A DNA stretch of 64,000 nucleotides from the IMG/VR virus record IMGVR_UViG_3300032307_000369, positions 62,001-126,000 of that record; one strand, given 5' to 3'. The notes beneath the pieces were generated by a model that saw only the letters and a program-made list of their open reading frames with translations, was not told the DNA's origin and did not search any database. Numbering within the stretch: the stretch's first letter is position 1; the number at the start of each line of letters is the position of its first letter. A program made the translations under genes and the position numbers. Of the stretch, positions 58,001 through 61,364 are shown one piece after another.

Positions 58001-58339
58001 ATGTCTAAAGTATTTGGAGCGCCAGAACAAGCTAAACTAAAACAACTAGTAAAAGATGGCTGGCAAGTAATGGACGAAATTAAAAGTCTGCAAGAAGGAT
58101 TGAATGACACAATCAAAGCTGTAGCCGAAGAGCTTGACGTTAAGCCAAGTGTAATTAAAAAAGCTATTCGTACAGCAATGAAGGACGACTGGGAACAAAC
58201 TGCTAAAGACTTTAGTGATTTGGAAGATATTGTTCATACAACAGGTCATGCTGGTCCATGGAATCAAAACACAACAGCAACAACAGCACAACCAAAACCA
58301 CAAGTAACAGATGATACAGACGATTCTGCACCATTCTAA
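58001..58339 (+). CDS. T4 DsbA/GapR-like dsDNA-binding protein
   Basis: helical LKQL..E...L.E.L.D.IK..AEEL...P..I.KA pattern; AGGAG SD. Confidence 0.55.
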   Translation: MSKVFGAPEQAKLKQLVKDGWQVMDEIKSLQEGLNDTIKAVAEELDVKPSVIKKAIRTAMKDDWEQTAKDFSDLEDIVHTTGHAGPWNQNTTATTAQPKPQVTDDTDDSAPF

Positions 58340-58613
58340 AAACGCTAAAGAATGGATCAAAGCTGACTGGGACGCAAATCCTTGGCGGTTAACTGCGGAA
58401 ACATATAATGCCTTTACAGCGTTAGCCACTGCTATCATTTTTGCCTTTATGGCTCCTAATGTGCCATACGGATTAACATATCCGTTATGGCTAAGTGGAA
58501 CATTTATAATGATATTTTGTGGCATAAGCCGAGGAAGTTTTGGCATGGTAGTAATGAGTGTTGTTATGACAATCATAGATACTTTTGGTTACATTAGATT
58601 TTTGCTACAATAA
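58311..58613 (+). CDS. 3-TM membrane protein
   Basis: three hydrophobic segments. Confidence 0.6.
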   Translation: MIQTILHHSKNAKEWIKADWDANPWRLTAETYNAFTALATAIIFAFMAPNVPYGLTYPLWLSGTFIMIFCGISRGSFGMVVMSVVMTIIDTFGYIRFLLQ

Positions 58614-58625
58614 ATATATGTAAGA

Positions 58626-58676
58626 TGGTTGATCCAGCCACAATTGGATATATTGGTTTGCAAGCCGTAAGTTGCA
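58626..58676 (+). ncRNA. tandem H-type pseudoknots in the DNA polymerase leader
   Basis: two units tggtt..agcc with different but self-complementary second stems. Confidence 0.55.
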
Positions 58677-58688
58677 GAGGAGAAAAAT

Positions 58689-61364
58689 ATGAGTTATGTA
58701 GATGCCTTCTGGGATAGAGAGAAGGACGTTATTCACGTAGTTGAACGTGATAACAAAGGTCAAAGACGTTTCGTCGACTATCCAGCGAAATACACATTTT
58801 ATTACCCTGATAATAAAGGCAAGTTCCACAGCATATTTGGTGAGTCATTATCCAAAGTCACTGCTAGAAACTTTAAAGAATTTGCAAAAGAACAAAAAAT
58901 ACACAGCAATCATACCTTGTATGAAAGCGACATCAATCCAGTATTCCGTGTTTTAGAAGAACAATACTTAGGTCAAGAACCTCCAAAGCTACATGTAGCA
59001 TTTTTTGACATTGAGGTGGACTTTGATCCAGAACGTGGCTACGCTAGTCCAGACGATGCGTTCATGCCAATTACTGCGATTGCTGTTCACCTACAATGGT
59101 TAGATACTCTAGTGTGTTTAGCTATTCCGCCAAAGACATTAACAATGGAACAGGCGAAAGAACAAATTAAAGACTTTCCAAATACAATATTATTTGAAAC
59201 TGAAGCTGAATTACTAGATACCTTTTTAACATTAATTGAAGATGCTGATGTTATTACTGGATGGAACAGCGAAGGTTTTGACGTACCTTACACAGTAAAT
59301 CGTGTAGTAAAAGTATTGAGTAAAGAAGATACTAAACGTTTTTGTCTGTTTGATCAGTATCCTAAAAAGCGTGAGTATGAAAAATTTGGCAGGACTTCAA
59401 TTACGTATGACTTTGTAGGTCGTGTACACTTGGATAGTTTAGAAGTATATAGAAAATACAAATATGAAGAAATGCACAGTTACCGATTAGATGTAATTGG
59501 TGAGCTTGAACTAGGCGAAAAGAAAACGCAATATGAGGGAACCCTAGATCAACTGTACAATCAAGACTTTAAAACATTTATTGAATACAACAGACAAGAT
59601 ACGTCGCTGTTAGATAAAATGGATAAGAAGTTAAAGTTTTTAGATTTAGCCAACGTATTAGCACATGGTAATACTGTGTTGTTACAAACAACAATGGGTG
59701 CTGTGGCTATGACTGAACAAGCTATTATTAACGAAGCACATCAACAAGGACTAATTGTTCCAAGTAGAGCAAGAAAGTCTGAACAAGGCGACACTGCGGC
59801 AGCAGGTGCTTATGTTGCGTATCCTAAAAAAGGATTACACGAATGGATTGGTGCTATCGACATTAACTCACTGTACCCGTCAGCTATTCGAGCATTAAAC
59901 ATGGCTCCAGAAACTATTGTGGGCCAATTGCGTCAAACAAAAACACAAGAGTTTATTGAAACACAAATGGCATTGCATAAAAAGTCCTTTGCTGGAAGTT
60001 GGGAAGATAAATTTGGTAGTTTAGAATACGAGTCAGTTATCAATCAAGATAAAGCAGAAGAAATTACAATTGATTGGGAAAATGGCGAAGTGTCAGTTCA
60101 CAGTGGTGCTGAGATTTATGATATGATTTTTAACAGTCATAAGCCTTGGATCTTGTCAGCTAACGGAACAATCTTCACATATGAAAAAGAAGGCATTATT
60201 CCAGGTCTGTTGAAAAAATGGTATGCTGAACGTAAAGAAATGCAAAAGAAGTCTAAGGATGCAGAATCAGCTGGAAATAAAATTGAAGCTGAATACTGGG
60301 ACAAGCGACAACTTGTGCGTAAAATTAATCTTAACAGTTTGTATGGCGCACTATTAAATCCAGGTTGTAGGTTTTTTGACAAACGCATTGGACAGTCAAC
60401 TACACTAGTTGGCAGATGTGTTGCTAGACATATGGCAGGTAAGATCAATGAAATCATTTGCGGTACATATGACTACAAAGGTAAAAGTATTATATATGGC
60501 GACACTGACTCATGTTATTTTAGTGCTTACTCAACATTAAAAACTGACATTGATAAAGGCAACATTGCATGGAATAAAGATACTGTGGTCACTTTATATG
60601 ATCAAATTGCAGATGAAGTAAACGACAGTTTTCCACAATTCATGCTTGATTATTTCCATGTACCTAAATCCCGCGGGGAAGTAATTAAGGGTGGTAGAGA
60701 GCTAGTTGCAATCAGTGGTCTGTTTATTACTAAAAAGCGTTATGGTGTTTTAATTTATGACAAAGAAGGCAAGCGTTTAGATGTTAACGACAAGCCTGGA
60801 AAAATTAAAGCCATGGGATTGGATCTTAAAAGATCTGATACTCCAGAATATATGCAAAATTTCTTAGAAGAAATTCTAACCAATGTGTTAGAAGGAAAAC
60901 AAGAAAAAGAAATTCTTGATAAAATTATTGAGTTTAGAAATGAATGGAAGACTCGTCCAGGATGGGAGAAAGGAAGTCCAAGACGTGCTAATAATATTTC
61001 TCAATATCAAGAAGAAGAACGTAAAAAAGGCAAGGCCAATATGCCAGGTCACGTTCGTGCCGCAATTAATTATAATAGAATGCGTGAAATGAATGGTGAC
61101 AAGTATTCTGTACAAATTGTTGATGGTATGAAAGTTTACGTATGTAAATTGAAAAACAACGCTATTGGGTATACAAGTATTGCATACCCTGTTGACGAAC
61201 TTAAAATTCCCAAGTGGTTTCAAGAACTTCCGTTTGATGATGCCGCAATGGAACAAACCATTATTGACAATAAAATTGACAATTTGATTGGTGTACTTGA
61301 ATGGGATATTGAAAGTACAACTGGTGCAGGAAACACGTTTAACAAACTTTTTGATTTTGAGTAA
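58689..61364 (+). CDS. family B DNA polymerase
   Basis: FDIE, GWN...FD, YN.QD; DINSLYPS, K...NSLYG, YGDTDS, KKRY. Confidence 0.97.
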   Translation: MSYVDAFWDREKDVIHVVERDNKGQRRFVDYPAKYTFYYPDNKGKFHSIFGESLSKVTARNFKEFAKEQKIHSNHTLYESDINPVFRVLEEQYLGQEPPKLHVAFFDIEVDFDPERGYASPDDAFMPITAIAVHLQWLDTLVCLAIPPKTLTMEQAKEQIKDFPNTILFETEAELLDTFLTLIEDADVITGWNSEGFDVPYTVNRVVKVLSKEDTKRFCLFDQYPKKREYEKFGRTSITYDFVGRVHLDSLEVYRKYKYEEMHSYRLDVIGELELGEKKTQYEGTLDQLYNQDFKTFIEYNRQDTSLLDKMDKKLKFLDLANVLAHGNTVLLQTTMGAVAMTEQAIINEAHQQGLIVPSRARKSEQGDTAAAGAYVAYPKKGLHEWIGAIDINSLYPSAIRALNMAPETIVGQLRQTKTQEFIETQMALHKKSFAGSWEDKFGSLEYESVINQDKAEEITIDWENGEVSVHSGAEIYDMIFNSHKPWILSANGTIFTYEKEGIIPGLLKKWYAERKEMQKKSKDAESAGNKIEAEYWDKRQLVRKINLNSLYGALLNPGCRFFDKRIGQSTTLVGRCVARHMAGKINEIICGTYDYKGKSIIYGDTDSCYFSAYSTLKTDIDKGNIAWNKDTVVTLYDQIADEVNDSFPQFMLDYFHVPKSRGEVIKGGRELVAISGLFITKKRYGVLIYDKEGKRLDVNDKPGKIKAMGLDLKRSDTPEYMQNFLEEILTNVLEGKQEKEILDKIIEFRNEWKTRPGWEKGSPRRANNISQYQEEERKKGKANMPGHVRAAINYNRMREMNGDKYSVQIVDGMKVYVCKLKNNAIGYTSIAYPVDELKIPKWFQELPFDDAAMEQTIIDNKIDNLIGVLEWDIESTTGAGNTFNKLFDFE

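What the first reader, a model, noticed from the sequence alone, without database searches (positions are those of the whole stretch)
58626..58682. Two tandem pseudoknots with internal covariation directly before the DNA polymerase SD
Seen: unit 1 is TGGTT-gATCC-AGCCA-caat-TGGAT and unit 2 is TGGTT-TGCA-AGCCG-taag-TTGCA. Stem 1 is the same in both. Stem 2 differs in sequence but stays complementary (ATCCA/TGGAT versus TGCAA/TTGCA) with a 4-nt linker. Unit 2 ends at the base before GAGGAG, and TAAATA is at 58611. Established: T4 gp43 and gp32 autoregulate translation through leader RNA structures, a pseudoknot in the gp32 case. Inference: a duplicated protein-binding translational operator, possibly an unnamed RNA motif.
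Basis: partly seen in the sequence, partly recalled or inferred. Interest (0 to 1): 0.7.

Follow-up and report, generated by a model that had tools for sequence, protein, structure and literature searches.

The report
Tandem pseudoknot leader before phage polymerase
The 75 bases in front of this giant freshwater phage's DNA polymerase gene fold into two small, evolutionarily conserved RNA pseudoknots that end at the ribosome binding site; this is a previously uncatalogued leader RNA that most likely throttles translation of the polymerase, as phage T4 does with a different RNA.

Summary
The window's 75-nt leader (58614-58688) between a 100-aa ORF and a family-B DNA polymerase holds two units of the form GGY - 0-4 nt - stem arm - GCC - N N A A N - stem arm. 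The second unit ends 0-3 nt before the Shine-Dalgarno sequence.

I collected 217 related polymerase loci from uncultured freshwater phages, giving 170 distinct leaders.
- **Hairpin stem (stem 2):** it covaries massively. All 9 pairs have double changes, 37-38 distinct helices exist per unit, and 0 of 500 shuffles reach the observed score.
- **Pseudoknot stem (GGU/GCC):** it is nearly invariant. Every change seen keeps pairing: U-G to C-G about 25 times, U-G to U-A 3 times, and G-C to A-U at three separate tree positions, with no uncompensated change.
- **Loop 3:** the two A's are invariant.
- **Specificity:** the motif occurs only in this leader (391 of 396 descriptor hits).
- **Insertions:** in three lineages where a small ORF was inserted, the motif stays at the head and the ORF overlaps the polymerase start (ATGA).
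- **Known families:** nothing in Rfam matches, and cultured relatives lack it.

The function was not tested. The best reading is a translational operator, probably autogenous as for T4 gp43. The result is a new variant of a known kind.

The parts
58610..58616 (+). ATAAATA box, a promoter-like element resembling the T4 late-promoter core; it overlaps the stop codon of the upstream ORF
   Evidence: ATAAATA occurs 27 times on + and 8 times on - in the 245-kb record. It sits 15-30 nt before many ATGs in the window. A TAA[AG]TA-like box lies most often 11 nt before the first GGY in related leaders (42 of 95). It persists where the upstream gene differs. Its function is inferred.
58627..58629 (+). 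Unit 1, stem 1 5' strand (GGU)
   Evidence: Pairs with GCC 58637-58639. Across 163 parsed unit 1 copies the states are GGU/GCC 135, GGC/GCC 23, AGU/GCU 3 and GGU/ACC 2. AGU/GCU sits at 3 separate tree positions.
58630..58631 (+). Unit 1, loop 1 (UG)
   Evidence: Loop 1 is 0-4 nt long, mostly 2, and its sequence is not conserved.
58632..58636 (+). Unit 1, stem 2 5' arm (AUCCA)
   Evidence: Pairs with 58645-58649. All 4 modelled pairs show double changes. There are 37 distinct helices.
58637..58639 (+). Unit 1, stem 1 3' strand (GCC); these are the first three bases of the hairpin loop
58640..58644 (+). Unit 1, loop 3 (ACAAU), with the invariant AA at 58642-58643
   Evidence: AA stands at fixed positions in 106 of 106 leaders, and the last loop base is never C. 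The parser required an AA somewhere in the loop, but not at that position.
58645..58649 (+). Unit 1, stem 2 3' arm (UGGAU)
58650..58654 (+). Spacer between the units (AUAUU)
   Evidence: The spacer is 3-9 nt long, mostly 5-6, and its sequence is not conserved.
58655..58657 (+). Unit 2, stem 1 5' strand (GGU)
   Evidence: Pairs with GCC 58664-58666. Unit 2 states are GGU/GCC 160, GGC/GCC 2 and GGU/ACC 1.
58659..58663 (+). Unit 2, stem 2 5' arm (UGCAA); U58658 can add a U-G pair with G58677
   Evidence: All 5 modelled pairs show double changes. There are 38 distinct helices.
58664..58666 (+). Unit 2, stem 1 3' strand (GCC)
58667..58671 (+). Unit 2, loop 3 (GUAAG), with the invariant AA at 58669-58670
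58672..58676 (+). Unit 2, stem 2 3' arm (UUGCA)
   Evidence: The arm ends 0-3 nt before the SD core in 97 of 106 leaders.
58677..58682 (+). Shine-Dalgarno sequence GAGGAG
   Evidence: Read directly from the sequence. It lies 6 nt before the ATG.
58689..61364 (+). Family-B DNA polymerase gene (891 aa), the gene served by the leader
   Evidence: Pfam DNA_pol_B 2e-34 and DNA_pol_B_exo1 1.5e-19. It is 40-50% identical to the polymerases of jumbo phages Phosso, Atu_ph07, SCTP-2 and RaK2.

Best explanation
The leader of the polymerase mRNA folds into two tandem miniature H-type pseudoknots.

**Architecture of each unit.**
- A 4-7 bp hairpin (stem 2) of free sequence.
- The first three loop bases, GCC, pair with a GGY triplet 0-4 nt upstream of the hairpin. 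This is stem 1, which stacks directly on stem 2 with no bases between them.
- The remaining loop, N-N-A-A-N, crosses stem 1.
- The second unit ends at the Shine-Dalgarno sequence.

**Function.** The element acts in cis on the mRNA as a gene-specific translational operator. A factor recognises the constant parts (the GGY/GCC helix and the two A's, presented on a helix of any sequence), sits on unit 2 and unit 1, and blocks 30S access to the adjoining SD. The most likely factor is the DNA polymerase itself when it is not engaged on DNA. Polymerase synthesis would then be self-limiting, as in T4, RB69 and RB49.

**Shown:** the position, stem 2, stem 1, the conserved bases, the sense-strand RNA nature, and exclusivity to this leader.

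**Inferred:** the transcription start just upstream, repression of translation, and the identity of the repressor.
For: **Structure.**
- Stem 2 covaries in every pair, 96.5-99% of cells are paired, and 0 of 500 shuffles reach the score.
- Stem 1 changes only in ways that keep pairing. G-C to A-U occurred at three separate places on the polymerase tree (L073, L083, L225). No uncompensated single change appears in 326 units.
- G-U pairs in stem 1 (nearly all units) and in stem 2 (for example 7 rows at pair 74-93) exist only on the sense strand.

**Link to the gene.**
- The two-unit model hits the 245-kb record once only.
- A strict descriptor finds 391 of 396 units in the polymerase leader across 1.14 Mb of related loci. 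The other 5 are at chance level.
- Unit 2 abuts the SD.
- In L105, L228 and L236 an unrelated small ORF of 100, 46 or 57 aa was inserted. Each time the motif stayed in front of the inserted ORF, and that ORF's stop overlaps the polymerase ATG (ATGA). Polymerase translation therefore stays coupled to the initiation site next to the motif.

**Precedent.**
- T4 gp43 represses its own translation through a leader hairpin plus the SD.
- The operator loops carry UAAC (T4, RB69) or UAAA (RB49), and the AC/AA loop bases matter for binding (PMC3014915; sequences).
- Here the hairpin loops read GCC-N-(U)AA-N with an invariant AA.
- Only helices and two A's are conserved. Loop 1 and the junction are free. 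This suits recognition of a shape by a protein better than a small-molecule pocket.
Against: - No binding or expression data exist. The complex predictor did not fold the job.
- Public RNA runs held only fragments of relatives and gave no 5' ends.
- Some T4-related polymerases do not autoregulate.
- The T4 operator is a single hairpin without a pseudoknot, and there is no sequence homology to it.
- Polymerases 49-59% identical, and the cultured relatives, lack the motif. Autoregulation through this RNA is therefore not a general property of the enzyme lineage.
- Two phages inside the clade (L220, L221) lost the motif.
- Stem 1 has only 3 bp and would be weak by itself.
Confidence: 0.45

Rival explanations
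1. The pseudoknots are the operator for a different trans-acting protein. Candidates are a phage translational repressor of the RegA type, the phage SSB, another replication protein, or a host protein such as ribosomal protein S1. The polymerase itself would not be the binder.
For: The structural and positional evidence is the same as for the best explanation. T4 also uses RegA and gp32 as translational repressors of replication genes. The tandem sites suit a dimer or cooperative binder.
Against: The motif occurs in front of one gene only. A general repressor such as RegA has many targets. Pfam found no RNA-binding protein among the neighbouring genes. Single-target operators are usually autogenous (established knowledge from ribosomal proteins, thrS, gp32 and gp43).
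Confidence: 0.2
2. There is no repressor. The tandem pseudoknots form a 5'-terminal structural cap that protects the polymerase mRNA from 5'-end-dependent decay (RNase E, RNase J), or they form a standby or enhancer platform that raises translation.
For: A promoter-like ATAAATA box lies most often 11 nt before the first GGY. The units would then sit at the very 5' end of the transcript. The motif stays at the head of the transcript when small ORFs are inserted.
Against: A stabiliser needs only a hairpin. The invariant GGY, GCC and AA and the duplicated design are more than that requires. Other genes with the same box have short plain leaders. Restriction to one gene suggests specific control. 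The transcription start is not mapped.
Confidence: 0.15
3. The element is a tandem riboswitch. Each mini-pseudoknot binds a small molecule, for example a nucleotide-related metabolite, and ligand binding changes access to the SD.
For: Small H-type pseudoknots with an A-rich third loop next to an SD are the design of preQ1-I and related riboswitches. Tandem aptamers are known for glycine and guanidine-II. Both points are established knowledge and leads only.
Against: Rfam riboswitch families give no match. Loop 1, the junction and the spacer are unconserved, so only two unpaired bases per unit are constant, which is few for a pocket. The only associated gene is a polymerase, not a metabolic or transport gene.
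Confidence: 0.07
4. The inverted repeats work as DNA, for example as an operator for a DNA-binding regulator or part of a replication origin, and not as RNA.
For: They lie just downstream of a promoter-like box. A 112-aa ORF with a weak Spo0A_C-like helix-turn-helix hit lies upstream.
Against: The helix sequences turn over freely while pairing is kept, which is not how protein-DNA operators evolve. G-U pairs would be C-A mismatches on the other strand. Stem 1/stem 2 interleaving has no meaning in duplex DNA.
Confidence: 0.03

Closest known systems
Translational operator of DNA polymerase gene 43 in T4, RB69 and RB49 (autogenous repression by gp43)
   Same: Both lie in the 5' leader of a T4-type family-B polymerase gene. 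Both have a short hairpin with a 6-9 nt loop just upstream of, or overlapping, the SD. Both loops carry UAA followed by A or C, and A's are important or invariant. Both are single-gene elements.
   Different: The T4 operator is one hairpin, and the review states there is no evidence of a pseudoknot. Here there are two units, each with a loop-to-5'-flank helix supported by compensatory changes. I saw no sequence homology when reading the leaders side by side, but ran no alignment or model search against the T4-type leaders. The hairpin stem sequence is free here. The host phages are uncultured jumbo phages whose polymerase is about 40-50% identical to those of RaK2-like and Atu_ph07-like phages. 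Binding by the polymerase is untested.
Gene 32 (SSB) autoregulatory pseudoknot of T4, T2 and RB69
   Same: Both are H-type pseudoknots with coaxial stems and a very short loop 1, in the leader of a phage replication gene, used for translational autocontrol.
   Different: The gene 32 pseudoknot is single and larger. It lies about 67 nt upstream of the start codon and nucleates cooperative binding over an unstructured AU-rich stretch. Here two small pseudoknots abut the SD with no AU-rich spacer, and the gene is the polymerase.
Small pseudoknot riboswitches (preQ1-I and relatives) and tandem-hairpin riboswitches (guanidine-II)
   Same: They share the overall size, an A-rich third loop, nearness to the SD and a tandem layout (established knowledge, not tested beyond Rfam).
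   Different: Rfam gives no match. There are too few conserved unpaired bases. The gene association is not metabolic.

Membership tests
T4-type gp43 translational operator | Lies in the leader of the phage family-B DNA polymerase gene, next to or overlapping the SD | tested here: met
   Unit 2 ends 0-3 nt before the SD in 97 of 106 leaders. The gene is DNA_pol_B.
T4-type gp43 translational operator | A single hairpin (5-bp stem, 6-8 nt loop) with UAAC or UAAA in the loop and no pseudoknot | tested here: not met
   There are two units, and each hairpin loop's GCC pairs with an upstream GGY. The loops do contain (U)AA plus one base. The T4 and RB49 sequences were read.
T4-type gp43 translational operator | Sequence homology to the T4, RB69 or RB49 operators | tested here: inconclusive
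   I compared the leaders by eye only. They share GCC followed by (A)AUAA[AC], and the rest is unrelated. I ran no model-based test.
T4-type gp43 translational operator | Bound by the polymerase, with repression of its own translation | not testable with these tools
   The complex job was not folded. An experiment is needed.
T4 gene 32 pseudoknot operator | A single pseudoknot far upstream of the start codon, followed by an unstructured AU-rich cooperative binding region, in the SSB gene leader | tested here: not met
   Here the pseudoknots abut the SD of the polymerase gene. The description of gene 32 comes from PMC3014915.
H-type RNA pseudoknot (structural class) | Two helices, with the 3' strand of stem 1 lying in the loop of stem 2, both supported by covariation | tested here: met
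   Stem 2 has 9 of 9 pairs with double changes. Stem 1 has G-C to A-U at three tree positions, U-G to C-G about 25 times and U-G to U-A three times, with no uncompensated change.
Any Rfam 15 family (including preQ1, SAM-II/V, guanidine and fluoride riboswitches and phage motifs) | Covariance-model match | tested here: not met
   No match overlaps the leader at E up to 10 in the window region. Six divergent related loci gave no match at E up to 5.

The most novel reading that the evidence does not exclude
The tandem mini-pseudoknots are a new class of ligand-sensing RNA (a riboswitch or a dNTP/nucleotide-state sensor), or a primer-template mimic that reports free polymerase. Either would couple synthesis of a phage replicase directly to the state of the nucleotide pool or of the replisome.
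Probability: 0.08. Interest if true: 0.85.

Novelty: new variant of a known kind. Interest (0 to 1): 0.6.

Why it matters
**Scope of self-regulation.** Self-regulation of a replicative DNA polymerase through its own mRNA is known only from T4-like coliphages, and there it uses a single hairpin. Here is a well-supported, uncatalogued RNA with a different fold at the same place. It occurs in a very large and abundant clade of uncultured freshwater jumbo phages, whose polymerase has thousands of relatives in metagenomes. If the polymerase is the binder, gp43-type feedback is older or more often reinvented than thought.

**A tractable test case.** The RNA is a compact, naturally duplicated model for how a B-family polymerase recognises RNA. 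It comes with a ready set of natural compensatory mutants and with natural insertions and deletions.

**Value whatever the mechanism.** It is a clean new candidate family for Rfam and a marker for this phage clade.

Tried and rejected
- **Single-sequence folding.** The nested MFE of the leader is no better than shuffles (z = -0.31). In isolation, stem 1 extended and stem 2 are competing nested folds of similar energy. Thermodynamics alone says nothing.
- **First alignments.** I rebuilt the model from a register-consistent subset.
- **A fourth stem 1 pair.** The base after GGY and the base before GCC looked covarying in the first 35 leaders. It fails in the larger set, with many A/A, C/A and G/A cases, so I rejected it.
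It is not conserved.
- **Cultured relatives and more distant polymerases.** Phosso, Atu_ph07, SCTP-2 and RaK2 lack the motif. So do polymerases 49-59% identical. One polymerase at 61% identity (L152) has a single unit.
- **Apparent 'motif-less' members.** In L105, L228 and L236 the motif sits further upstream, ahead of an inserted ORF. Only L220 and L221 truly lack it.
- **Other copies.** I found none in the 245-kb record or in 1.14 Mb of related loci. A weak hit on the minus strand of L010 (6864-6929, E 0.03) is a hairpin without GGY or GCC.
- **RNA evidence.** Three RNA-type runs hold only 5-7% of the words. Laying them gave contigs of relatives and no 5' ends. One 206-nt contig spans 58581-58785, but DNA carry-over cannot be excluded.
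- **Complex prediction.** The job with the polymerase and the leader RNA was not folded and gives no evidence either way.
- **Literature.** My searches found no description of this motif. One reference (PMC137073) was not held.

Full report
**The observation.**
- Unit 1 is TGGTT-G-ATCC-AGCCA-CAAT-TGGAT at 58626-58649.
- Unit 2 is TGGTT-TGCA-AGCCG-TAAG-TTGCA at 58654-58676.
- GAGGAG lies at 58677-58682 and the ATG at 58689.
- TAAATA lies at 58611-58616 and overlaps the TAA stop of the upstream 100-aa ORF (58311-58613).
- The downstream ORF (58689-61364, 891 aa) is a family-B DNA polymerase (Pfam DNA_pol_B 2e-34 and DNA_pol_B_exo1 1.5e-19).
- Taken alone, the leader does not fold better than shuffled sequence (z = -0.31), and Rfam has nothing there. 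Whether the observation means anything had to be decided by comparison.

**Where the window comes from.** It is part of a 245.5-kb IMG/VR virus record estimated to be 70% complete.
- Its polymerase is only 40-50% identical to those of the cultured jumbo phages Phosso, Atu_ph07, SCTP-2, RaK2 and their kin.
- It has thousands of relatives at 75-91% identity in metagenomes, on contigs up to 358 kb.
- The public runs that hold the sequence are freshwater and lake metagenomes.

**Comparative material.**
- I fetched 217 loci with a polymerase 67-100% identical: 58 usable loci from viral contigs, 79 usable loci from metagenome contigs and 80 more from viral contigs centred on another branch.
- They give 170 distinct leaders.
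- The first MAFFT alignment and model were out of register in a third of the rows. I therefore built a second covariance model from a register-consistent subset and realigned everything to it.

**Stem 2, the hairpin.**
- On 35 leaders, 99% of cells pair, with 79 double-change cells.
- On 97 leaders, all nine stem 2 pairs show changes on both sides. There are 254 double-change cells in all, a covariation score of 0.48 against 0.14 in shuffles (0 of 500 reach it), and only 20-50% pairing when the partners are slid by 1-3 columns.
- There are 37 distinct helices in unit 1 and 38 in unit 2.
- On the polymerase tree the helix identity changes at least 55 and 67 times. Even sister phages often carry unrelated stem sequences. 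Only the shape of stem 2 is under selection.
- One subclade carries a bulged base in stem 2 of unit 1.

**Stem 1, the pseudoknot helix.**
- Only a 3-bp core is conserved. A GGY triplet 0-4 nt upstream of the hairpin pairs with GCC, the first three loop bases.
- Invariance by itself says nothing, but the few changes are telling.
  - Unit 1: GGU/GCC 135, GGC/GCC 23, AGU/GCU 3 and GGU/ACC 2.
  - Unit 2: GGU/GCC 160, GGC/GCC 2 and GGU/ACC 1.
- Every change keeps a standard pair, and no uncompensated change was seen in 326 units.
- The three AGU/GCU leaders (L073, L083, L225) change the first G and the last C, exactly the two partners of one pair.
- On a polymerase tree of 167 rows they sit at three separate places. 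Their nearest neighbours all carry GGY/GCC. The sister pairs L083/L077 and L073/L088 have 99% and 96% local support.
- Exchange of leaders between phages could reduce the number of independent events. Their hairpins and loops differ, however.
- Both changes lie within unit 1 while unit 2 stays GGU/GCC, so the pairing is within a unit.
- Single-unit leaders (L029, and L152 at 61% polymerase identity) show that the unit is self-contained.
- My parser looks for a complementary triplet and is therefore biased towards finding one. The position-fixed count by the tool agrees: pair 13-31 is GC 95 and AU 2, and pair 16-29 is UG 83 and CG 13. The 'other' cells come from rows with the bulged base that the model misplaces.
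- I rejected a fourth stem 1 pair that looked good in the first 35 leaders, because it fails in the larger set.

**Architecture.**
- Loop 1 is 0-4 nt long and free in sequence.
- Stem 1 follows stem 2's 5' arm without any intervening base, so the two helices can stack.
- Loop 3 is 5 (sometimes 6) nt long. It has an invariant AA at fixed positions, and its last base is never C.
- The spacer between units is 3-9 nt long.
- Unit 2 ends 0-3 nt before the SD core in 97 of 106 leaders.
- This is the geometry of a small H-type pseudoknot with an A-rich loop in the groove of a G-C-rich stem 1 (the geometric reading is established knowledge, not tested here).
- G-U pairs in nearly every stem 1 and in several stem 2 positions exist only on the sense strand. 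The structure therefore belongs to the mRNA, not to DNA.

**Specificity and natural experiments.**
- The two-unit model hits the 245-kb record only at the polymerase leader.
- A single-unit descriptor finds nothing else above chance there (6 hits against 6.2 ± 2.9 expected).
- Over all 217 loci (1.14 Mb, both strands), 391 of 396 strict hits lie in the polymerase leader. The other five are coding-sequence matches at the level of shuffles.
- Three lineages acquired unrelated small ORFs between the motif and the polymerase: L105 (100 aa), L228 (46 aa) and L236 (57 aa, Cys-rich). Each time the motif kept its place in front of the first start codon, and the inserted ORF ends in an ATGA overlap with the polymerase start. 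Polymerase translation thus stays coupled to the initiation site that the motif adjoins.
- Two members truly lack the motif, L220 and L221. L221 is the sister of a motif-bearing phage.
- The motif is absent from polymerase leaders at 49-59% identity and from Phosso, Atu_ph07, SCTP-2 and RaK2.

**Transcription.**
- ATAAATA is strand-biased in the genome (27 against 8). It precedes many start codons by 15-30 nt.
- At the polymerase gene it lies 72 nt before the ATG, with the two units filling the extra space.
- A TAA[AG]TA-like box lies most often 11 nt before the first GGY in relatives, also where the upstream gene differs.
- By analogy with T4 late promoters (my knowledge), the transcript would start a few bases before unit 1. 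This is inference. Public RNA runs gave no usable ends.

**Comparison with what is known.**
- Rfam 15 has no match in the window region or in six divergent loci. My paper searches found no description.
- The closest functional precedent is the gp43 operator of T4, RB69 and RB49. It is a hairpin in the polymerase leader plus the SD, bound by the polymerase. Its loops carry UAAC or UAAA, and the AC/AA bases matter (PMC3014915).
- I read the T4 leader (AGCCU-AAUAACUC-GGGCU, 8 nt before AAGGA) and the RB49 leader (CUUUC-GUAAAU-GAAGG, overlapping the SD).
- The present hairpins resemble them in place, size and the (U)AA of the loop. T4 even shares GCC followed by AAUAA. However, the review states that the gp43 operator shows no pseudoknot. 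The present element is duplicated, and there is no real sequence homology. It therefore works like that operator at most and is not a member of it.
- The gene 32 pseudoknot is single, distant from the start codon and followed by an AU-rich binding track. It is not the same kind either.

**Mechanism.**
- My best explanation, at about 0.45, is a gene-specific translational operator made of two mini-pseudoknots, bound by a protein that reads the constant GGY/GCC helix and the two A's. That protein is most probably the polymerase itself.
- The rivals are another protein as binder (0.2), a repressor-free 5' stabiliser or enhancer (0.15), a tandem riboswitch (0.07, disfavoured by the lack of conserved unpaired bases and by the gene association), and a DNA-level element (0.03).
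- The attempt to model the polymerase-RNA complex was not folded by the tool and counts for nothing.

**Verdict.**
- The functional part is plausible but untested.
- This is a robust, uncatalogued RNA motif, a new structural variant of the known theme of leader-RNA control of phage replication genes.

Noticed in passing
window 7272, 14095, 23729, 31379, 56576, 58610 and others: ATAAATA boxes are strand-biased (27 on + against 8 on - in the 245-kb record). They sit 15-30 nt before many start codons. They look like a T4-late-type promoter core used widely by this phage.
   Followed up: partly
L105:1202-1504; L228:264-404; L236:231-404: Three unrelated small ORFs of 100, 46 and 57 aa were inserted between the motif and the polymerase gene in different lineages. 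Two of them are Cys-rich and look like zinc ribbons. Each ends in an ATGA overlap with the polymerase start. Pfam finds nothing in the 100-aa ORF.
   Followed up: partly
L152, L153, L154 (polymerases 58-61% identical): More distant relatives of the polymerase carry intein-splicing domains, and their polymerase gene is called in pieces (Pfam Intein_splicing).
   Followed up: no
L098, L106, L112, L120, L125, L129, L136, L138, L139, L142, L034, L093, L111, L118 (unit 1): One subclade has a single bulged base (A, U or G) inside stem 2 of unit 1, for example GCG-A-G paired with CCGC. It is kept across many members.
   Followed up: partly
L093, L098, L109, L112, L117, L120 and others, polymerase start: Many relatives start the polymerase gene with TTG instead of ATG. 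A subgroup has a shorter N-terminus (start ...TTGTAC or ATGTAT).
   Followed up: no
window 58001-58339: A 112-aa ORF two genes upstream of the polymerase has a weak Spo0A_C-like (helix-turn-helix) Pfam hit below the curated cut-off (E 4e-4, 20.7 bits against 25). Phage Phosso has a 'DNA binding protein' annotated at a similar place.
   Followed up: no
L010:6864-6929 (minus strand): A hairpin AGCUG-GCAAAUAAA-CAGC has a loop like the motif's but lacks GGY and GCC (model R2, E 0.03). It is probably chance.
   Followed up: no
window 58581-58785: A 206-nt contig from a lake 'RNA-Seq' run (X23) spans the whole leader of a close relative and begins upstream of the ATAAATA box. This could be read-through transcription or DNA carry-over.
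   Followed up: no
L221:1-400: In the sister of L123 the motif is replaced by a different upstream gene and a GGGUUUCCAGAACCC hairpin before the SD. This is a natural loss of the element.
   Followed up: partly
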